Positions 46 to 51,912 of a DNA stretch of 64,000 nt are shown here, piece after piece. The translations under genes and the position numbers were made by a program. Each line of letters starts with the position of its first letter. Position 1 is the first letter of the stretch. The stretch is from positions 1,302,001 to 1,366,000 of the forward strand of contig NW_027270987.1 of assembly GCF_040938485.1 (NCBI RefSeq), written 5' to 3'. The notes under the pieces were generated by a model, which saw only the letters and a list, made by a program, of their open reading frames with translations, did no database searches and was not told the origin of the DNA. The stretch is from Diadema antillarum. Its lineage: Eukaryota.

Positions 46-3000
46 TCAGATTCCGCCAAAACCAATGACCTTCATATTCTGGAACTCGTTCAGTCCATAT
101 TTCGACCCTTCCACGCCGAGACCAGACTCCTTGACTCCCCCGAACGGTAGGGCGTTGTCGAAGATGAAGGTGTCGTTGACACCGACCATGCCGACTTCCA
201 TCCGCTCGGCTACCCGCCAGATCTGGCCGATGTCGTTGGAGTAGAAGTAGCCCGCCAGTCCCATCCGCGTGCTGTTGGCGATGGTGACCGCTTCTTCCTC
301 GGTTTTGAACCTGCGTGAGAGGGGTAACCATGGCAACAAAACATCATCTTGAAAGATACATGTACATTGTTGACAGCTACACAGTGCTCTATTCGTAACT
401 ATTTATTTGCCATGGTGCAATATCTGAGTACCAACTTTGATTCATACAAATATTTCTTAACGTTAAATGTTATTGCGTTATCCAAATAAGTATATACTAA
501 TATGATTACGAGCTGCTTTCTAAAATACGGACATTGACAATGAAAAAAGCAACTTCCCAATAGTTTCACAATTTTCGCTGCAATGGGAGGCATTCATTTG
601 TCTGTAACTATCGATTAGGTCATTTAAAGTGGTTTAGCTAAAATGGAGTTGAAGTGGGGGAGAAAACACATGAATTAATGGGTAGTCCTAATGATAATAA
701 ATGATAAGAAACCGGTTTACTGAAATAAGTTAGAAAGGGCTAATAATGTGTGGAGGACGAAAGATGAGAGGTGGGTTGAGATTTCTGCCAAGTGGGTTTA
801 GCTGGAAAGAAAATGAAGTTTAAGACCATGTGCTTTGTGGCCTCTACAATATTTGCCAACAGAGCAATACAAAGAAGTAGTACAAAAGGGAGTCTGTACT
901 TATCAGAAGAAACTTTATATTTCTTATGTCATTTTTTTCTTTTCACATATATTTCAAAATCCTTAAAAGATATATTTTCTGCTTTAGTCTTTCAGCCCAA
1001 TTGTCCTTCTTATTCACAGCGGAAGAAAGATAACCCAAAAGTATTTGAAACACGGCAGTTCCAAACGCCTCTTATACGATAGGTTTACTCTCGTCAACTT
1101 TACGAGACTGCTAACTGTCAATTGGTTTAAATTTGTGAATTTGGTTTAAATTGATTTAAATTCGTGACGGACGCAGAGCATCTCTGTGACGTCACTCACT
1201 TGATGATGGAAGCAAGAGGACCAAAAGTCTCCTCAGAGCAGACGAGCGCCTCCTTCGGAATGTCGCAGACGACTGTCGGCTCGAAGAAATTCCCGCCGAG
1301 TTCCGATCGCTTGCCTCCCACCAAAAGTCTCCCGCCACTCTTCACGGCATTTTGAACGTGGCGCTCAACCTTAAAAGAACAATCAAGGGGATAATCTTTT
1401 TATTTTTGGCGCACACAACGTCATTTACACTACACAAACCAGCGCTGCAGAAAGCTTGAGGCTGCAAGGTTGACTCTGGTGCATAAAAAGTCAAATAAAA
1501 ACATATACTTCCAGCAGTACAACTCTGAAGTCGGACTTTAATTGAAACAAGTAGCAGTACTGTCTCATCCAAGCAAAACAGTTCAAACGCTTACGAATGG
1601 CTTCATTCCCTAGCTAAGTCCATTGAGCAGTTCAGTCGGTTAATTTGCAGATACCGACAGTGCTCAGTCATTACAGTGCAAACAGTGAAAAAAAACCCCG
1701 GGCCAACTGGTATGCTGGAGAACACAGACTTACTACCAACAGGAAAGCAGTACATTTGTGTTGTCATGGAGACTATCTGGCCTCCATTCTGTGATCCATT
1801 AATACCTTTTCCAGTCCCTTTGCGTTGATCAGGGGGCCCAGTGTGGTCTTTGGATCCATGCCGTTGCCCACGACGAGACTTGAAGTAAGCTTGGCCAACT
1901 TTTGACAGAACTCATCGTAGATCCCTTCCTGGACCAGGATCCTGTTGGCGCTGATGCAGACCTGGGTGTAGCAACAAGCCAAGGTTGGTTTTAATGCCAT
2001 GTTGACGTAACTATCAGAAAGGAGACACCCCGATTTACCTACCCGTGTCTATTAACTCCTTATAAATTTTTGTCAAAGATAAGACAATTTCCATGATGAT
2101 ACACACAACAGCAAATAAAGAAGCGTTCTAATCAGTTGTTCATTCGTAATTGGTTGCAATTATTACTTTTATGTAGCTTTGTTACTTTGCCATACGTACA
2201 AAGGTCTTATCAATGTGATGAAGTCACCCTTTTGTAGAAGAGTACACAAGTCACTTTCCCCTTTTGAAGTTGAAAAACAAATGATATTCCGATATATTAT
2301 GATGCCCTGTCCTTGGAAAATATTCATGATGACATGGTCCTGAGACATTACAGAAAGTTTGCCATTGCCCGTCTAGTTCCTTATTCGACTATAATTAATC
2401 TAAATAATATGCATACTGTCCCTCCTTGAAACACAATCCAGCATGTCCAGAGTGTTACAACCCAGCCCTGAAGTTGACACCTTTTAGCCAAGTCTCAATC
2501 CGAGTTTGCCGATGAATATATCCCTTACTTCAGATCTGTGACTGTCTGTTTTCGTCCTAGTTTACAATGTTAATTTCTCAAACACCCATTCATGTTACCG
2601 TAGATAATCATTTGAATCCAATGGTTCCTGACGTCGTTTTCAGTTGATGTAAATGGAAGAACGTTCAGTAAAGGGTACTGATAGAATCCAGTGCGAAATA
2701 TCGGAATGACCACGCAAACCAGCGATGTTTGAAGGGAAATTTAACGAAAATCTCCTCTCACACTACTTCTCCTTATTTTGCTCTGAATATATGTATAGTC
2801 CATCTACACTCACCTGGCCTGATCCGTAAAATTTGAGTATGAAACAACCCATAGAGGCCGCATCGACATTGGCCGAGTCAAAGACGATGAAGGGCGAGTT
2901 TCCCCCGAGCTCCATAGATACCTTCTTCACTGTGCTAGCCGACTGAGCCAGGAGAATCTACAGCAAACAAATATAGGCCTATATATTATAGTCACGTCAT

Positions 3001-22804: not shown

Positions 22805-24575
22805 TCACACACCGCCGAAGCAGGCATACTTGATCTCCATGTATTCGTCGATGCCGTACTTGGATCCCTCGCGCCCCATTCCCGACTCCTTGATCCCGCC
22901 AAAGGCCGACACGTCGGAGGAGATGAGGCCCTCGTTGATCCCGACCATGCCAACTTCCATCCGCTCGGCGACCCGCCAGATTTGGCCGATGTCGTTGGAG
23001 TAGAAGTAGCCCGCCAGTCCGACGCGCGCGCTGTTCGCGATTGTCAGCGCCTCCTCTTCCGTCCGGAATCTTGGGGAAAAAACAACAACAAAACTAAACA
23101 TGAAACAAATAACAACGTGATAAAAGGGTAGAAGTTTAAAGGGTACCGAACAGACAGATTCCCCTTCCTGTTGACATTGCCTTTGACTGAGTTAAAGGTG
23201 AAAACACCTTGAAAATTAATTTGTGTATGTATAAGAAGCAGAAAAAAAACCCCTGAAGAAATACAGTGCTACGTTTGAGGACATTCGGATCAAACCTGAG
23301 AAAATTATGATTTTTTTTTTTGTCGTTGTTGTTACGACAAATCAAAAATAAACTGCAATTCTGTGATGTCACACGCATGCTCACGCCATTGGCGCTGCAT
23401 TACAAAATGATAAAAAAAAAGAATTTCCCTGAAGCAAATCCCCATCATACAGGCACCCTTGAAACAAATACTATATTACATATGACATAATAATTCGGTA
23501 CAGTGCTAATGCATCCAACTTGGCACCTTCACACCCTCAAGTTGAAAAAACACATTGCCAACAAACCTAACACATGAACTTGATTTCTCATCAGTTAATA
23601 GTTGAATTAATTCATATATCTAAATTACTAATTTGAATAAAGCCACAACCAGTAATGCTACTCTCGCTCTTAGATCTTATGAAGAATTGGCCTTGGGTGC
23701 ACCACTTCCGGATCAAACTAGCCTTACAAACTAGTCTGGATTCCAGACCGTCGGGTTGTACTAATTTCCTTCCCAGAATATTAACGCCCTCTAACGATAA
23801 AAGAAATGGCAGGTTCAGCTGGATGGTTCTGTAGACAGTCTTCGGCAAAGGCAGCTGCGAGTAGAGCGCATTTGTGAAAGGAGTACAGTTGGCAAAGGGT
23901 CTGGTAACCGCCTGAATAATGTGATAAACAAATGATACTACAGGCAAAACTTGGGTGAAAGATCCAAAATGACCCAAATAAAAGGATAATTTCTGGAAAA
24001 TATTGTTTTTATCAATTACCTCTAGTACATCTAGATGTTTGATGACTGTCACATGAAAAAAAAAAGACCATTTCACAACCATTCACAACCCTTCATAATT
24101 TGGTCTTTCAGTAAACGATAGCCACGAAAACCCTATCTCACTCACTTATTCATTTGTTAACTGAAATGAAATGAACAGAAAAACATGCAAAATCTGACTG
24201 ACAAGATTGTTAGCTTAGGTTTGACATGGCAACCAGCAATATCAGTCATACCTAAGTTATTAAGTATTCGCAACAAAATTTTAGGAAAAGTCACCGAATT
24301 AGGTTTAAATTGATTCAAAGGCGCAAGAGTGGCAAATGGAGATAGGGGAAACAATGTGCCCCTGGGATTTATAGGGTTACAGGTCAAAAGCAAATTAAAG
24401 TTATTAAACGTTATTAAGCAGAGTGGTTTCTTTGACATTACATAACACACTTCCTAACCAGAACGGATTTAAGCAAGATTGTTGACTCAAATAGAAGTTA
24501 GTGAGATCATCCCCACTCCCATAAAAAAACGACAAAGAAACAATCAAACGAAATAAAACACTCCCCTCCCCTCCA

Positions 24576-24624
<49 letters not shown>

Positions 24625-27600
24625 TGGAAGGGGGACTGGAACGCTTGGGATTAATGTTCAAGGAAATCCAAACTATCATCACTATGTCTATTTAATCATG
24701 ACTTTATTCAAGTTGAAGGCAATGTGAGTAGAACATTTACAAAAACCAGGTCCACCGTTTTTTCAATACGAAGTGCAGGTTTAAGTTTTTAGAGTTACGA
24801 AATAACTGTTGAAGGTTACATTACCACAACAAAAGATACATTATCATGCATATGATACTTTCGAATATCAATCAGTTATCTCAATCTTCACTATCTTAAT
24901 TTTTACGTGACCCTGTGCCCCAAAATCCCCACAATCACCAACTAATGATAAATACATAAATCCATCTCTACGACTATAAACCATTATTTCAGAATATACA
25001 GAAACACAAACACAAAATTCTACATTGTTCGGCTATCGCCTTTACCCATGGCCCACTCTTTCTCAATAAAATCACTATCGATCTACACTCAGTTAAAAAA
25101 AAAATACATGTAATTAAAACCTTTACCACCAAAACACATTTAAAACAAAATACAAACAATTACCTTGTGTTCGCAAGGCAAAAGATATAAACTCAACTTT
25201 CCAGACGTATTATTTATCCATTTAACACCCTGTGACCTTGTGACCCGAGATTCCCTCCCCTTTCCATCAGAAACGAAACTTAATCAATGTAGTGTACTAC
25301 GTATACGCCTTAAACCTGCGGCTAATACTAAAATTTAAAAAGAAAAATCTATTTCAATACATATCTCAAACAATATTCTGAAATCACCGCATAAAAACGG
25401 TTACGGATAGACATGCATATTGCCTCCGGTGACACTTCGTCGCGAAAACATAATGGGTGTGAATATCAGCTTGTGAAGCCCTACGGATCTAGGTACCGTA
25501 CCTCCCTAAAAGCTTTCTCTTTTCTGGCTTAGAATATCGTAAAGAGGAAGGTATGGCGAGTTTAGAAAGTATCTGAAAGAAATCATTTGGACGAATTTTG
25601 GAATTTGCTGTTTTCAGAATTGTTACCCGGAATAATGAGTCCCCTTGCCCAGATTTCTAACGCATAGAATGACACGGAGTAACTCTTATCCTGGGTGTCC
25701 CGCACGATTGAACTATACTTTTCTACTTTCCTTTGATGTGCATCCTCGAGGTTGGTTTCAATGGGGACAGTTAACTCAACAATCGTGATTTTTTTTTTCT
25801 TCTTCCCACAAAATAAGTAAATCTGGGCGAAAACTTGTGGTGGGAATATGTGCAGGTACGGTGCCCCCGGCAATTGAATGTCCTTTTAAATCAGTGTAGG
25901 TGTAGACGTTCCCATTGAACAGATTTTCAAGAAATGTTTTGTGTATGTACCTCAGTAAATCATTATGTCGCCACTCATATCTAAAAGAGAGGAAGAAATA
26001 TGGGCAATTTGAGAGTATAATGATGCAAAGTACCTGTGGTGCCCAGAAAAAAACAAACACATTTATCACTAATAAATAATAAAATATACGATAGTGACGT
26101 GACCATTGTGACTCTCTTTCAATAGCGGAGTTGTTGCTATCATTAAATATATTTATTTATTTCAGAATGGCTTGATCAGTATCAGCTGCTTTTCATTATT
26201 GAATGCAATAAACTTGTATCACACCAGTGGCAAGGAATTCCAGGTCAGCTGCAGTAACAATTTGAAAAAAAAGGAAAAAAATCGACAGTATAACAAATAT
26301 CAAAACAACAAATAAAAATCGTGTCTCTGACTCTATACACTCTTTTAACGAAAGGAAATACAAAGGATTACAAAAAAATCTCGAGTTGATATTAAAGTAC
26401 ACATGCGCAAGAAAGCAGCCATACGTCACTTTTTTCTCTTTTTTTTTAGACAGTTGGGGGGGGGGGGGGCTAGTGGCAAAAGTACGCAAGATGGGGGGAG
26501 GGGGAGGGGTAATCACGGAGAGCTTCGATGGCATACTGGACTATCTTTATATCCGTTTACAGAGTTGACTGAGTTGAGTTGACTGATGCATTTGCAGCAC
26601 ACACACACATCCGTTGATTTTTACGTCGCCGTGTTGATCACAAAGCTGGCACTGGTCCCGAGGAGCGTCTATTGGCATCACTCTGATCTACATCATTTTC
26701 AACGGGATCATTCTGGGTAGTGTCATTGCGAAGGGTCGATGCACTGGTCTTGTCATTAGCCGTTTGAAACCCTCGAGCTATGAAAATGACGGCGATCATT
26801 CCAATGCTTTAGGTGTAAGTACACTTACGGTCTCCGAGATGGAAATCTCCGTCTTGCACAGCCCGTCAGGTTCAACTTTGTGGGCAGTTTGGATGAGGAC
26901 AAGAGCATACATGATTCTCCAGTTTGTTATCCCTTTCGTAGTTTGTATGTGAAGGCTCCAGCCCGGTACTTCGTGGACTACTCAGTACGTTTGTATCTAT
27001 TGGTCCTTACACCAGCTGCCAGCCATAGATTGGACTGATGCGTTAGGTGACGAACATACTAAACTCCGGGCAATAACAGCAAAGACGATCAAACAGAGTT
27101 GCATATCTCATAAGGCTCTCCAACAATGTCCCTGAAAAGCAGACTAGATAGAGTACGTATCAAAATCACACACGTGATATATTCAGGCTCTGCAAAATTT
27201 GCATGTAAAACGAAGTACGGGAATATAAAAGTTTCAGCGACATTTCTCCGTCCGTACAAACCACGGTCAAAACTGTCTTAAAACAAGAGTAATTCTTGCC
27301 TATGAAAGAATCACAGACAATGACGAACTAGGACTGACTACAGTCCACCGATGCACAGGTACTTGACGTTCATATACTCCAGCATGCCGAACTTGGCCCC
27401 CTCCTGTCCTCGCCCGGACTCTTTAAAGCCCCCAAATGTGGCGCCCTCGGTTGAGATGAGGGGCTCATTAACCGCCATCATGCCGAACTCGAGCCGCTTG
27501 GTTAGACGCCACACCTGCCCAATGTCTCCAGTGTAAACGTAGCTCGCGAGGCCGTATCGGACGCTGTTGGCTATAGCAATCGACCCTAATCCTAATCCTA

Positions 27601-30600
27601 ACCCTAACCATCAAACCCTAACCCTAACCCTAACCCTAATCCTAACCCCAACCCTAACCCTAACCCTAACCTCCTCCTCGTCCTAAAATCTGAGCGGGGA
27701 AGTGGACTTTGCGTCTTACTATCCCATGATTCCGTACGATATCACTTTGCTGTGCCACTTCGGCCGCACAATACAGCAACTTTGACATTTTCGATTACGA
27801 CACTGCGACTGATGGTGAATCATAACTTGTTTTCAAGGACATTACACCGCAGTCTATTGCGGATTTTGATATGAAAATCTGTGAAATTTTACACATATAC
27901 GGTAATCATACTGTAACAGACCAGTTATGTTAATCTCTGCAACTAAGCAATGTACAATTTGAATTGGCAATAGTGCCTTACTTGAGTCTAGTTTTGAGAC
28001 TAATCTTGTGAGTCTGAGAGGTGTGGATGAAAGCTAGCATGTCTTAGCTCAAAGGTTCCAGAAGTTTCAACAAAGTTGTGGAGAAACAAGAGGCCTGAAC
28101 TTGGTGAGAAACCTGGGTTACAATGCCTGGACTATGAAAATGACAACTTTGTTATTATATAGTTGTACAATAAGTGACAAGTGTGAGTTTGAAGCATGAT
28201 TTGTCAAGTTGTGTAAAGAAAGGTTGTAGTCAGTGCTGCTGAGGGCAGCTGCATTACGCAGAGTTACTGCATAAGCTAAGGTATGGTACCGATGGTGCAG
28301 ATAAATGTGTGTGTTATACCTGGCAAACTAGAGAGTAACTTGTCACAATGCTATGTCATATATGAAGAATACTGGTTGGCTTCATGATATTAGAGGGAGC
28401 TTGTGTGATTACTTTTGGGTGACACAGTAATGTATGCTCCAATGCAGGCAAGCCGTTCATGTTTATGCATAGTGTTTCCATTGGAAGTTTGATGCTATGC
28501 AAGTATAAATAGTCACGGTGTAATCACTGAAACTTTGAAAGGTGACTGATTATAGGTGATAAGTGATCCGGAGTGATTGTGTAGTAAGAAATAAGGGAGA
28601 TGAAGGAAGACAGGGTATGCTGTTTCATTCCTTTCCCTAGGAATAAGGTTGTAGTTTTATGGCATAGGTTGCAGTGTGAGTGAGAATGCCATATTTCAAG
28701 AGTCACTTCATGCTGTGTTCATAGTTTAATGAGAATGATGGAAATAGAAGGTATGACAAGTATCCTGTATGAGGTACACCATACGATGGAAACGGTATTA
28801 GCTTTACCATTCAGGCATTGAATGATGGTACGTCATAGCACTCTACATGGGGTATAAGGTAGCCTTAGATACATGGTATCGATCCATCACCCAGAGAGAT
28901 GATGAACTAGTTGTATCTAGGTGTAGTGGTGCAGTGTACTAAAATTCAAGAAGTATGCTGTATCGGCTATAACATACACCTATGTTACTGTAGCATCAAT
29001 GTGTTGTATATTCTTCTCTATGGAGAGTGTGCCAGATGGGATATGTTACCATGCTCGCTGGAATGTATAATACGGATGACACTGGCTAGGTGTTTGATAG
29101 GAGTTATCTGTTATGACAAATAGAGTCTGTGACTCAAATTATAGTGCCGTTAGGTACAACAAGACACTAAGACATTCATGTTATTTTTATGTAATGTTGA
29201 TACTACAGAGTTCAAGTTCACTGAGTGGCTTGGAAGTCACTGCACGGAGTCGAGTCTCGAGAGAGCTCAAGAGGGGTGAGTTGTAGTAGGGCAGTGATAA
29301 GCATATAGGCTAGCAAGCTCAACACTGCTTAATTTGTACATAGGTTGTTGTTGAAAGGAAACTTGTTTCAGGAAGTTTTTGGTCAGTTGAAATGTGCTTT
29401 GTTTAATACATTTCAGAGTTGATGTTGTACGATACAGTATATTGGTGTTGATAGTCCTACAAGCCTGTTTGCTGACAAGGTAATATCATTAAATTTGTGC
29501 TGTTTGTAGTACATATAGCAGGCTGTGAGTTATTTTGCATATTATGAAAGCAGATGTTGGGACATATACACTGAGTCCAAAACAATACAAAGCAAAATAA
29601 ACAACAAAAAAAGGGGGGGGGGGCAACTATATGCATGTGGTTGAAATAAATCAGAAGGGAGTACATTGTATATTGTGAACTTAAAGAATAAAGATGATTA
29701 TCAGTGTAGATAATCTTCAGTGACAATGGTATAAAATCATATTTGTACAATGGTGTATGGTAATGAAAACGATATGGATGGAAAATCATAAAACGTGATA
29801 TTGATGCTTCCATTACAGTTCACATGGATTGGAATGCTGAAAAGCATGAATGAACAAAACTTAAGCATCAGTTGTGAAGTATGTTACAACAATATGCAGT
29901 TTGTAGGTATGTTACATGGCCATTGTGTAAGTCATGGTTTGTTCTTTGTTGTTGTTGTTCTTTTCAGGGTTAAGCCACCCTCAATTAAAGTCTGCCACTA
30001 TACTGAACAAATGATGGAGTCCAGTGTCATTTGTCTCAAACCTGCTGTGTTACAATACAATTTATACTATACACTGACAAACAAACAAACAAACAGACAA
30101 ACACATAGGATTGACAATGTTTTACGGATTTCTAACACGGCAAGGCATCTTGTCGAGTAAGGAGAATGCGATCCGCTGCAAACCGATTCTTTTTTTCTTT
30201 TTAAAGTGCCACTATATTAAGTCATTCATTTTAGTTGTTCAAGGTTTCTTCGAGTGACGTTTAAAAGCTCTTGAAAAAAAATCTTGGAAAGGAAATATAT
30301 ATTAGAATTTCATTTTTTTGGCACTTTTAATCTGAAAGCTATTTCAGTTATTTCTTATTTTAAACGAAATAACCATCCGTGTTCAAAATTATGTATTGAT
30401 TTGAGACTTAATCTGCATTCACATAGCATTATACTTTGTATTGTCCACTGAATTGTGGCGGTGAATGATAATAAGAAAAATCGCCTACTAGACTATACTG
30501 TACGTGTGTAATAGAGCCTAGAACTACAAATTATGAGTACGTTCCTGCTCTCGGCATTTAATCAGTGTTTCGCAGAGAGATTGGTACATGGGACATGGGG

Positions 30601-33600
30601 CGGGGGGGGGGGGGGGGGGGAGGGGTTCCAATGAGCTAGTCATGAAGGGTATCTGACTTATCAACCAACACTTACTTTATGATCGGGGCCAGAGGTCCGA
30701 AGGTTTCTTCTCGACAGACGAGGGCGTCATTCGGAACATCGCGAATAACGGTGGGCTGGAAGTACGACCCGCCAAGGGCGTGTCTCTGGCCTCCCACCAG
30801 GACCTTGCCGCCACGAGCCACGGCATCGTCCACATGCTTCTCCACCTGTAGACATCAGAGAGAGAAATGACGGCAGGTATTGTTTGTTTGTTCATTTTCC
30901 ATCTGAGAAGATGGTTGGATAACCAATATTCAGCTACGATAAGCTGGTCTCGCATGGGCTCCAGTTGATGTGAGGCGGAACACTTCACCGGGTTAAACAC
31001 GCTGCTCTTTACGATCTGAATGAATGAAGCGGAATCTTTTACGTGCATGAGATGTGGCTCTCTCACACACGGGACCTTCATTTTATGTCCTATCCGAGGG
31101 ACAGAGTGTTTTGCCTCTTGCTAGAGGGGGACGGTATCATTACACACAACATTGCTCAGTCCAGACTCGGGTTCGAACCCGGGTCGCTTGGGTCTGAGGC
31201 AGACGCGCTACCGACTGAGCCAACTCACCACACTAAAGTTTATAACAGGGACTCACTGTTAGCTCCAGTGAGTTTCGACAAAAATCATGAAAATAGTAAA
31301 TAAATCAAAGAGTCAGCAAAATAATGCAGGAAGAAGCAAAGTTGGAGTAACACTTAGCTATAACGAACTGTGTCGTACAGTAGTACGATCAAAATGTAAT
31401 GTCTGGCTTTGATTTCAATGGACTGAAATTAACTAACGTTTCAGCCAGTTGATTGCATTCGAGTATTATAATGATAGAAATGGCGAAAGGATGACATTTT
31501 GAAATTAGCGTGATACACACGCTGTCATTCAAGATAGACTTTGGAGAAGCTCTTGAATTTAATGTGCGAGGAGCGACCAGTGAAAGAAAGGGAAAACAAT
31601 TCCAACAAACTAACAAACTAACAAACACATAATCTTGCGACTACACAATGTCGTATTCGAAGCAGTTATACATACTTTCCTAAATTTCTATGGTTATTTG
31701 CTGTAATTGAATGCTCTGCTGTTCGCATTGACTTCTGAGCGTTCTGTATCAGCTTTCCGATCCACACAGGGGCCTATAAGGAAGATCGTATCATTAATGC
31801 CCAGGGTCATGGCTGTGAGATTACTCAGTACTTTTCAACATGGTATGGCAGCATAGATTTACAAACAGAAAGAGGAAGCTCTGAAAGAGGAAATTACTCA
31901 ACAATGTGATATCGGAAAGTCTAGAAAGTTCACTGATCGGCGCACAAAAGTTATATACATGTGTGGATGGGTTTCGAAATGCTTTCTCACTATCAGCGAA
32001 ATAAAAATCCTAAAAACCTATTGAGATATCAACAAGTCTTCGCAAAACTCTATACTTCACAGCTGGAGTGTAAAGCAACATGTTTCACTGGTTTTGATTG
32101 GATATAGTACTTAGAGACAATCATATAGACTTCTGTAGGCTAGTCTTGATCTTTTCCTCTTCTTTNNNNNNNNNNNNNNNNNNNNNNNNNNNNNNNNNNN
32201 NNNNNNNNNNNNNNNNNNNNNNNNNNNNNNNNNNNNNNNNNNNNNNNNNNNNNNNNNNNNNNNNNNNNNNNNNNNNNNNNNNNNNNNNNNNNNNNNNNNN
32301 NNAACTGAATACTCACGAACATGTTTGGCGTATGCTTGCACATGTCACATATCACCCTTTCCCCCCTCCCCCTCCCCCTTCCCCTCCCCCCCCCCCCCCC
32401 CCCCAATGACGTTTCACGTGAATATACCCTCTGCTCCCTCATCGTGCAAGTACTACATTGATAGAGCTTGGATCAAAGGCTAGCACCCACCTTCTCCATA
32501 CCACTGACGTTGATGAGCGGTCCCTGGGTGGTGGCCGGGTCCATCCCGTCGCCTACTACCATCTTCTCCACCTCGGCGCTCAGTTTCTGGCAGTACTCGT
32601 CGTACACTTTCTCGTGCACCAAGATTCGATTAGCGCAGACACAAGTCTGACCGAAACAAAACAACAACACACACAAACAAAAGGGGAAAAGGTCAAATTC
32701 ATTCTGGAAGTGTTGCATGTACTGTAGCCAGTTATCAATGTAAAACTTCCACACTATCCCTCATGAATGATTCCAAATGCTGACAATCTCAAGTACACGA
32801 AAGTAACTGTTAACTGCTAAATATGTTAATTGATAAATCGGTTAACCGCTATCCACAATGACAATTCTGGAAAGCTCACAACTCGTTAATATTTCACGCA
32901 TCACAAATAGGTCACACACGTTTCACATCACTATGATATTTTCACAAATTTTTGCGTCTTAATCCAATGCTGCCAAAACACGACGGTTTCTGTTTCTTGA
33001 TGTTTTCTTCTTTATAATTCCTTTGCTATTGGCAACATCTTAGGTATATAATATCAATATGACGTATAGATGTTGTGCCGCTGACAAGGGAAACGTCTTA
33101 ATTTGCGAAATTAAATCAATACCAAATTTAGACAAAGAGCAGCAAACTGTTTTTCTTAAGAATAATAACAGACGGTCGAGTTGATCATACTCAGTACCTG
33201 GCCCGATCCGCGGAATTTGCAAACGAGCGTGCCCGCCACGGCAGCATCCACGTTCGCTGTTTCGAAGACAATGAAGGGGGCGTTGCCGCCGAGCTCCATG
33301 GAAACGCGTTTGACCGTGTCTGCAGCTTGCTTCAGGAGAATCTGGGGGCACGCACCCAGAGAGTGTGTGGAAGACAGTGAGTAACATACACGAAAATATA
33401 GAAACTAATACACACATAATTAGATAATGCACATGAAATACGTACCAATACACAAGAAATGTCGGATGTTTAATATCACGGCTGTTTTCCGGGCTTCCGG
33501 GCAATCAATAGGTTATCAATCATGCACTTAATAATCACAAACAAATTAAACACTTCCACCGACATTTCATAGATATTCATAGCATTTATGATACATCGTC

Positions 33601-51771: not shown

Positions 51772-51912
51772 NNNNNNNNNNNNNNNNNNNNNNNNNNNNN
51801 NNNNNNNNNNNNNNNNNNNNNNNNNNNNNNNNNNNNNNNNNNNNNNNNNNNNNNNNNNNNNNNNNNNNNNNNNNNNNNNNNNNNNNNNNNNNNNNNNNNN
51901 NNNNNNNNNNNN
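51772..51912. other. Assembly gap
   Basis: Run of N. Confidence 0.99.

What the first reader, a model, noticed from the sequence alone, without database searches (positions are those of the whole stretch)
27338..27689. A third, divergent SSADH terminal exon in the last intron: lost paralog or former alternative C-terminus
Seen: same strand, same splice phase and same length (265 nt without the insert) as the two functional last exons, but very different in sequence (SYVYTGD...[23 protein letters not shown]). Apart from one TAG and the insert it has no indels or stops, so it was probably under selection until fairly recently. It lies upstream of the working exon 9 and keeps its acceptor. Inference: paralog A may have switched substrate-loop and oligomerisation tails by alternative last-exon use. 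If still spliced, it would give a protein truncated at K-F-stop.
Basis: partly seen in the sequence, partly recalled or inferred. Interest (0 to 1): 0.7.

Follow-up and report, generated by a model that had tools for sequence, protein, structure and literature searches.

The report
Dead third SSADH last exon
Inside the last intron of an ordinary sea-urchin succinate-semialdehyde dehydrogenase gene lies a dead spare copy of its final exon, from a separate old lineage that is still open in another organism; here a stop codon and an inserted telomere-type repeat killed it, so it is a tidy but fairly ordinary evolutionary relic.

Summary
At window 27689-27338 (minus strand) lies a third ALDH5/SSADH terminal exon. 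It has the same strand, the same phase-2 acceptor and the same 265-nt length as the working last exons of gene A (23069-22805) and gene B (310-46).

It is broken by a TAG at codon 3 (giving K-F-stop). It is also broken by an 87-nt degenerate (TTAGGG)n insert that sits inside an Ala codon and carries an in-frame TGA.

The rest matches Pfam Aldedh (69 bits) and keeps the Ser498 and Glu515 equivalents. It shows dN/dS 0.13-0.18 against the two live exons and still has coding-type GC3 (0.73).

It forms a strongly supported, long-stemmed clade with an open exon from another organism (P0001/P0004, 72% identical). That clade sits inside the metazoan ALDH5 group.

This genome holds three ALDH5-type terminal exons but only two copies of the two other exons I checked (4 and 8). 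No other relic of a third gene was found.

Best reading, about 0.5: an old local duplicate of exon 9, once used as a proximal alternative last exon and recently inactivated. Main rival, about 0.3: the remnant of a lost third paralog.

The scan had already noted the telomeric insert separately (s1-215268).

The parts
27690..27712 (-). Acceptor region of the pseudo-exon: a pyrimidine-rich run ending in cag
   Evidence: The sequence ...tccacttccccgctcag|A is comparable with the acceptors of the working exons.
27670..27689 (-). 5' piece of the pseudo-exon: A TTT TAG GAC GAG GAG GAG G. The TAG lies at 27685-27683.
   Evidence: With the AA from exon 8A it reads K F stop D E E E. The homologues have R, K, S or D where the TAG stands.
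27583..27669 (-). 87-nt interstitial telomeric sequence, (TTAGGG)n on the coding strand. Its length is a multiple of three and it carries an in-frame TGA at 27613-27611.
   Evidence: period 6, 14.5 copies; 5 substitutions and one 2-nt indel against a perfect repeat. It sits between the G and the CG of an Ala codon, with no duplication or loss of flanking bases.
27338..27582 (-). Body of the pseudo-exon: an open frame of 80 codons plus the TAG stop. It encodes the SSADH C-terminal tail (Pfam Aldedh positions 386-460).
   Evidence: homology; dN/dS and GC3; clade with P0001; conserved columns.
30676..30848 (-). Exon 8 of gene A, with donor AA|GTAAGT after 30676
22805..23069 (-). Working terminal exon 9A of gene A (265 nt, canonical ALDH5A1 type)
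   Evidence: 124 bits to human SSADH; 71% to fish SSADH.
46..310 (-). Working terminal exon 9B of the downstream paralog B (265 nt)
27904..30057 (-). Solo LTR of a very young Ty3/Gypsy-type retrotransposon, lying between exon 8A and the pseudo-exon. It is not part of the exon.
   Evidence: 97-100% identical copies genome-wide, paired about 8.15 kb apart; a full copy has gag and a 1430-aa RT-RNaseH-integrase ORF.

Best explanation
This is a pseudo-exon: a dead third version of the last coding exon of an ALDH5 (succinate-semialdehyde dehydrogenase) gene.

**Shown**
- It belongs to its own fast-evolving tail lineage, which is nested among metazoan ALDH5 tails and is still open in at least one other organism.
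- It evolved as coding sequence for most of its history.
- It is now disabled by a nonsense codon and by a telomere-type repeat inserted into an Ala codon.
- Gene A, the canonical mitochondrial-type SSADH, is complete without it, through exon 9A 4.3 kb further on.

**Inferred**
- It arose by an old local duplication of exon 9 inside gene A.
- For a long time it served as a proximal alternative last exon, spliced from the exon-8 donor at 30676 to the acceptor at 27689. That would have given an SSADH isoform with a different C-terminal tail: the NEP(L/I)[10 protein letters not shown] loop and an [10 protein letters not shown] end.
- In this lineage the isoform was given up recently.
- The telomeric repeat was probably added during repair of a double-strand break, as described for short interstitial telomeric sequences in mammals.
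- If the acceptor is still used today, the product ends at K-F-stop and lacks the last 86 residues.
For: **Anatomy**
- Same strand, phase, length and acceptor as the working exons.

**Homology**
- Pfam Aldedh 69 bits and human SSADH E 1e-22.
- It keeps the equivalents of Ser498 and Glu515, which are conserved in all SSADHs (PMC11681614; positions taken from the alignment).

**Long coding history**
- dN/dS is 0.13 against 9A and 0.18 against 9B, with dS saturated. GC3 is 0.725, against 0.62-0.86 in the live exons and about 0.40 GC in the window.

**Separate lineage**
- P0001/P0004 are 72% identical and share G40P, R59Q/N and S62A.
- The Psi+P0001 clade has 100/97 support and a stem of 0.47, inside a metazoan group that is split from bacterial tails at 97/98.

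**Recent death**
- The tip branches are equal (0.21 and 0.22).
- Three near-invariant columns are broken only here and none only in P0001.
- The repeat has only about 6 changes in 87 nt.

**Exon-level rather than gene-level origin**
- The genome has three ALDH5-type terminal exons but only two ALDH5-type copies each of exons 4 and 8.
- No other relic exon lies in the window.
- Exons 3, 5 and 8 of gene A are closer to a fish-like SSADH than those of gene B, just as 9A is. Exons 1-8 therefore belong with 9A.
- Without the young solo LTR, the exon 8-to-pseudo-exon intron is about 830 bp, like gene B's last intron of about 890 bp.
Against:
It is therefore unknown whether the P0001 exon lies in an ALDH5A1 last intron or in a gene of its own.
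- In the word search with 9A, no 9A-type ORF came from contigs of the sizes that hold P0001/P0004. This is weak evidence.
- P0001/P0004 run on past the usual stop, so that exon may be internal or itself decaying.
- There is no AATAAA or ATTAAA within 1.17 kb downstream of the pseudo-exon's stop. The working exon 9A also has none within 960 nt.
- The 80-residue tree cannot place the lineage relative to A and B.
Confidence: 0.5

Rival explanations
1. Stump of a lost third paralog. A complete Psi-type gene once stood in the tandem array. An unequal crossover in intron 8 made an A1-8/Psi9 hybrid next to a full gene A. A later deletion removed the second set of exons 1-8, and the parent gene was lost. 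The exon was never a regulated alternative.
For:
- The tail lineage is as diverged as a separate paralog.
- No 9A-type ORF was seen from the P0001/P0004 contig sizes.
Against: - It needs at least three rearrangements plus the loss of the parent gene, against one exon duplication.
- No trace of Psi-type exons 1-8 was found in the window, and the genome holds no third ALDH5-type copy of exons 4 or 8.
- In the hybrid state the exon would have been the only exon 9 in reach of some exons 1-8 anyway.
Confidence: 0.3
2. The exon is still spliced. It would act as a 'poison' proximal last exon, giving a transcript that ends at K-F-stop. That would yield either a truncated protein or a way to turn gene A's output down.
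For: - The acceptor and its pyrimidine tract are intact.
- The exon lies nearer to exon 8 than 9A does.
Against: - There are no expression data.
- A protein cut before the last 86 residues lacks the Ser498 and Glu515 equivalents and the tail contacts.
- The three unique hits in near-invariant columns fit relaxed selection on the coding body.
- A 2.15-kb LTR now sits 215 bp upstream.
Confidence: 0.1
3. Dead on arrival. A fragment of a Psi-type gene from elsewhere was pasted into the intron by a transposon, a retrocopy or break repair.
For: - The window is rich in transposons (earlier notes).
- Young LTR elements are nearby.
- The scan noted MITEs that carry telomeric repeats elsewhere in this genome (s1-224732).
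Against: - The homology starts exactly at the exon's acceptor. There is no exon-8 sequence upstream, so it is not a processed copy.
- No inverted or direct terminal repeats bracket it.
- Other copies of the LTR do not carry it.
- The insert contains only telomeric hexamers.
- Landing in the homologous intron, on the same strand, would be a coincidence.
- No source gene exists in the genome.
Confidence: 0.06
4. The pseudo-exon is gene A's original exon 9, and 9A was taken over from a deleted neighbouring gene.
For: Without the LTR it lies at an ordinary last-intron distance from exon 8 (about 830 bp), while 9A lies 7.6 kb away.
Against: Exons 3, 5 and 8 of gene A are slow-evolving and closest to vertebrate SSADH, like 9A and unlike the Psi tail.
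Confidence: 0.04

Closest known systems
Tandemly duplicated homologous exons used alternatively, and their decayed copies (pseudo-exons) in introns
   Same: It is a homologous copy of a neighbouring exon, on the same strand, with the same phase and length and its own acceptor. It shows long purifying selection, and it now carries a stop.
   Different: It is a terminal exon, so choosing it would involve polyadenylation as well as splice-site choice, not an internal mutually exclusive pair. Use as an alternative was not shown here.
Human ALDH5A1 (SSADH, PDB 2W8N) C-terminal segment
   Same: The 80 residues align end to end (E 1e-22), with the Ser498 and Glu515 equivalents and the FGG.K.SG.G.EG motif.
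   Different: About 51-54% identity only. Gly40 is Pro, the Pro before FGG is Thr, and Ser62 is Ala. The exon is not translatable as it stands.
Short interstitial telomeric sequences inserted at double-strand breaks during repair (mammals: PMC2246262, PMC7215372)
   Same: A pure run of telomeric hexamers was inserted without target duplication or loss, and a paralogous 'empty site' reads straight through.
   Different: It lies in an echinoderm and inside a coding exon, and its length keeps the frame. No orthologous empty site was available, and telomerase involvement is inferred, not shown.
Paralog B of the same window (diverged ALDH5 copy)
   Same: Another fast-evolving ALDH5 tail at the same locus.
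   Different: B is a complete nine-exon gene that lost the Ser498 equivalent. The pseudo-exon is a lone exon that keeps it.

Membership tests
ALDH5/SSADH terminal exon (Pfam PF00171 C-terminal part) | Significant match to the Aldedh profile end and to solved SSADH structures | tested here: met
   69 bits, profile positions 386-460; best PDB hits are all SSADH (8OF1, 2W8N, 4V6H).
ALDH5/SSADH terminal exon (Pfam PF00171 C-terminal part) | Residues conserved in all SSADHs within this segment (Ser498, Glu515 in human numbering) | tested here: met
   In the alignment (query 1-80 to chain 408-487), positions 43 and 60 are Ser and Glu. The residue list comes from PMC11681614.
ALDH5/SSADH terminal exon (Pfam PF00171 C-terminal part) | Uninterrupted reading frame from acceptor to stop | tested here: not met
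   TAG at 27685-27683, plus an 87-nt insert with a TGA at 27613-27611. It is a pseudo-exon.
Alternative last exon / homologous alternative exon pair | Same phase, length and strand as the partner exon, with its own acceptor and own stop | tested here: met
   265 nt, phase 2, cag|A acceptor, TAG stop.
Alternative last exon / homologous alternative exon pair | Own polyadenylation signal downstream | tested here: inconclusive
   the first AATAAA is 1177 nt after the stop. Exon 9A's first is at 960 nt, so the test has little power.
Alternative last exon / homologous alternative exon pair | Splice junctions from the shared upstream exon to each alternative | not testable with these tools
Alternative last exon / homologous alternative exon pair | Same arrangement at the orthologous locus of relatives | not testable with these tools
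Word searches are limited by length. The JGI scan found only bacterial types.
Short interstitial telomeric sequence inserted at a break | Only telomeric hexamers, with no target-site duplication or deletion against an uninterrupted homologous site | tested here: met
   Removing the 87 nt restores GCG (Ala), the residue in 9A, 9B, P0001 and human. The comparison is with paralogues, not an orthologous empty site.
Processed pseudogene (retrocopy) | Joined exons without introns, a poly(A) tail and flanking duplications | tested here: not met
   Homology begins at the acceptor. There is no exon-8 homology upstream, no A-run after the stop and no flanking repeats.

The most novel reading that the evidence does not exclude
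Echinoid ALDH5A1 carried, and some species may still carry, a homologous alternative last exon. It would give a second SSADH isoform with a remodelled C-terminal loop and tail. This species lost the isoform recently when a break in the exon was repaired with telomeric repeats.
Probability: 0.4. Interest if true: 0.5.

Novelty: new member of a known kind. Interest (0 to 1): 0.33.

Why it matters
It records a third ALDH5 tail lineage in sea urchins, known so far only from this relic and one unnamed exon in public data. If relatives still splice such an exon, SSADH would have a regulated C-terminal isoform that has not been described, and it could be compared biochemically with the canonical enzyme. 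It is also a clean example, outside vertebrates, of a telomeric repeat placed inside a codon without loss or gain of flanking bases. For annotation, the practical point is that the exon should be marked as a pseudo-exon and not joined into gene models.

Tried and rejected
**Readings rejected**
- Bacterial origin or horizontal transfer: the tail sits inside the metazoan group, split from bacterial tails at 97/98. It also shares the IANSxR and DIGQ(I/V)W motifs with the urchin exons.
- Retrocopy, or cargo of a transposon: no upstream exon homology, no bracketing repeats, and copies of the LTR do not carry it.
- Assembly join through the 2.15-kb LTR: exon 9A is the only canonical exon 9 in the genome. 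It lies on unbroken unique sequence with the pseudo-exon, so exons 1-8 must connect across this stretch.
- An intact copy or a second haplotype elsewhere in the genome: none.
- Relic exons of a third gene: none in the window, and no third ALDH5-type copy of exons 4 or 8 in the genome.
- Flank homology between the pseudo-exon and 9A or 9B: none beyond the coding part.

**Searches that added nothing**
- More Psi-type proteins: a representative search with the 80-residue body found only P0001 above 59% identity. A word search with P0004 and a JGI metagenome scan with P0001 gave only bacterial-type SSADH at 64% or less.
- Rfam on the window and on the full LTR element: no match.

All exon queries were made exon by exon, by reference.
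- The N runs at 32166-32302 and 51772-51912 were left alone.
Full report
**Setting**

The window is G000:C99:1302001-1366000 of a 1.75-Gb assembly. Earlier notes of this scan call the organism a sea urchin. The TTAGGG repeat and the closest protein matches fit a deuterostome invertebrate, but I did not establish the species.

A tblastn with E. coli GabD (locus L001), followed by exon-wise comparisons, shows two tandem nine-exon ALDH5/SSADH genes on the minus strand.
- Gene A: exons from about 47288 down to 30676, with the last exon at 23069-22805.
- Gene B: exons from 10577 down to 46.
- A and B are 49-82% identical per exon and 68% in exon 9.

**The observation**

Between exon 8A and exon 9A, at 27689-27338 on the same strand, lies a third terminal exon.

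Exon 8A ends at 30676 with two codon bases and the donor GTAAGT. The pseudo-exon follows a pyrimidine-rich cag acceptor and starts A TTT TAG, so a splice would read K-F-stop. After D-E-E-E and one G comes an 87-nt run of degenerate TTAGGG units (27669-27583; TRF period 6). Then comes CG and an open frame of 80 codons that ends GGL-stop.

Without the insert the exon is 265 nt, exactly the length of exons 9A and 9B. Taking the insert out restores GCG (Ala), which is the residue found in 9A, 9B, human SSADH and P0001 at that place. The insertion therefore neither duplicated nor removed flanking bases. The insert's length keeps the frame, but a degenerate unit gives an in-frame TGA (27613-27611).

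The body matches Pfam Aldedh at 69 bits, against 75.5 and 76 for 9A and 9B. It aligns end to end with human SSADH (E 1.1e-22).

**What kind of sequence it is**

Identity of the three tails is 56% (Psi-9A), 50% (Psi-9B) and 68% (9A-9B) in protein, and 64%, 60% and 72% in DNA.

Nei-Gojobori dN/dS is 0.13 and 0.18 for the pseudo-exon against 9A and 9B, with dS saturated above 2. For nearly all of the time since the copies parted, the sequence therefore evolved as a coding exon. Its GC3 is 0.725, within the range of the live exons (0.62-0.86) and far above the 0.36-0.45 GC of the window. This argues against a long neutral phase. Homology with 9A and 9B stops at the coding borders, so the duplication is old.

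**Relatives**

The word search with the 80-residue body found three short proteins. The best is P0001 (128 aa, ENA, 72% identical), with P0004 in the same 90% cluster. They read ...Y-R-F-S-D-E-R-E-A-L-A-I-A-N-S..., so they have the same exon start after a T-rich stretch. They share with the pseudo-exon the unusual NEP(L/I)[10 protein letters not shown] and [10 protein letters not shown] stretches.

The search of 1.84 billion representatives with the same body gave nothing else above 59% identity. A word search with P0004 and a scan of JGI metagenome contigs with P0001 gave only bacterial-type SSADH at 64% or less.

A maximum-likelihood tree of 37 tails shows two things:
- Metazoan-type tails separate from bacterial-type tails with 97/98 support. 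The metazoan group includes two fish, an amphipod, 9A and 9B.
- The pseudo-exon and P0001 form one clade at 100/97 inside the metazoan group, on a long stem (0.47) with equal tips (0.21 and 0.22).

The order of branching inside the metazoan group is unresolved.

Of 31 columns that are at least 90% invariant in 35 other tails, the pseudo-exon breaks six. Three are shared with P0001 (G40P, R59Q/N, S62A). Three are its own (V26L, V35M, G36A). P0001 breaks none on its own.

The Ser498 and Glu515 equivalents are kept. Both are conserved in all SSADHs according to PMC11681614. Paralog B has Phe at the Ser position.

**Timing**

Against a perfect repeat, the telomeric insert shows five substitutions and one 2-nt indel in 87 nt. 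If it was inserted as a perfect repeat, that is about 6-7% of neutral change. About 10% of invariant columns are newly broken in the exon, which is of the same order.

A simple simulation shows that an 80-codon frame stays open with probability 0.46-0.59 at 5-8% neutral change. The open frame alone is therefore not evidence of selection. GC3, the equal tip lengths and the few unique hits are the better evidence for a recent death. Which lesion came first, the TAG or the insert, cannot be told.

**Gene-level or exon-level origin**

The genome holds exactly three ALDH5-type terminal exons, all in this window. It holds only two ALDH5-type copies of exon 4 and of exon 8. No weak relic of any other exon lies in the window.

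Exons 3, 5 and 8 of gene A are clearly closer to a fish-like SSADH (P0071) than those of gene B: 61 against 41, 50 against 42 and 53 against 41% identity. Exon 9A shows the same pattern, at 69%, while the pseudo-exon is at 53%, close to 9B's 56% against a fish tail. So exons 1-8 and 9A form one coherent canonical gene, and the pseudo-exon is the odd one out.

One local duplication of exon 9 explains the arrangement of exons 1-8, pseudo-exon, exon 9A. A whole-gene origin needs an unequal crossover in intron 8, a deletion, and loss of the parent gene. A lone exon kept under purifying selection inside this intron could only have been expressed through the exon-8 donor, that is, as an alternative last exon. 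This is inference, and I give it about 0.5. The lost-paralog route gets about 0.3.

**What could not be tested**

No RNA or DNA reads could be laid, and present or past splicing remains untested.
The contigs that encode P0001 and P0004 could not be read.
- As an indirect check I looked, in the word search with exon 9A, for hits from contigs of 8901 or 8195 bases. There were none among the best 120. This is weak evidence against a 9A-type exon close to the P0001 exon.
- P0001 and P0004 read on past the usual stop, and they differ by a frameshift about 24 residues later. In that organism the exon either has a donor after ...CIG or has lost its stop.

**The telomeric insert**

It consists only of telomeric hexamers. 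The G-rich strand lies on the coding strand. There are no terminal repeats and no target duplication. This matches the short interstitial telomeric sequences described in primates, rodents and horse as insertions made during double-strand-break repair (PMC2246262 and PMC7215372, found). The scan noted this insert separately (s1-215268). It also noted MITEs carrying telomeric repeats elsewhere in this genome (s1-224732), but nothing MITE-like flanks this one.

**Verdict**

This is a real, well-preserved pseudo-exon of a third ALDH5 tail lineage. Most likely it is a former alternative last exon of the canonical SSADH gene, recently inactivated. It is a new example of a known kind of relic. Its worth lies in pointing to a possible undescribed SSADH isoform in other echinoids and in the clean telomeric insertion.

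Noticed in passing
window 27904-30057; full copy at L095 (G000:C792:297900-306500): A 2154-bp solo LTR lies in gene A's last intron, 215 bp upstream of the pseudo-exon. It is 97-100% identical to LTRs paired about 8.15 kb apart on many contigs. A full copy has a gag ORF (PNMA, zf-CCHC) and an open 1430-aa RT-RNaseH-integrase ORF, so this is a very young Ty3/Gypsy-type family. I only observed it. The copy here lacks about 175 bases that other copies have near one end.
   Followed up: partly
window 22808-23047 versus 49-288: Exons 9A and 9B share a block of near-identical DNA, about codons 9-36, inside an otherwise 68% identical pair. This is the conversion patch already noted by the scan (s1-215122). 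The pseudo-exon does not share it.
   Followed up: partly
genome-wide: Many ALDH exon matches come in identical pairs on different contigs (C291/C483, C453/C1780, C835/C711, C370/C36), as if haplotigs or a recent large duplication were present. The SSADH locus itself is present only once.
   Followed up: no
P0001 / P0004 (ENA, contigs of 8901 and 8195 bases): The only close relatives of the pseudo-exon read through the usual stop (...CIG-VKTIP...) and then differ by a frameshift. A donor site after CIG or a lost stop would both explain it.
   Followed up: partly
window 30597-30625 and 26456-26476: Long G runs (up to 29 G on the plus strand) flank the region, one of them just downstream of the exon 8A donor. 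The plus-strand GC skew of 28001-30000 is +0.29, mostly within the LTR.
   Followed up: no
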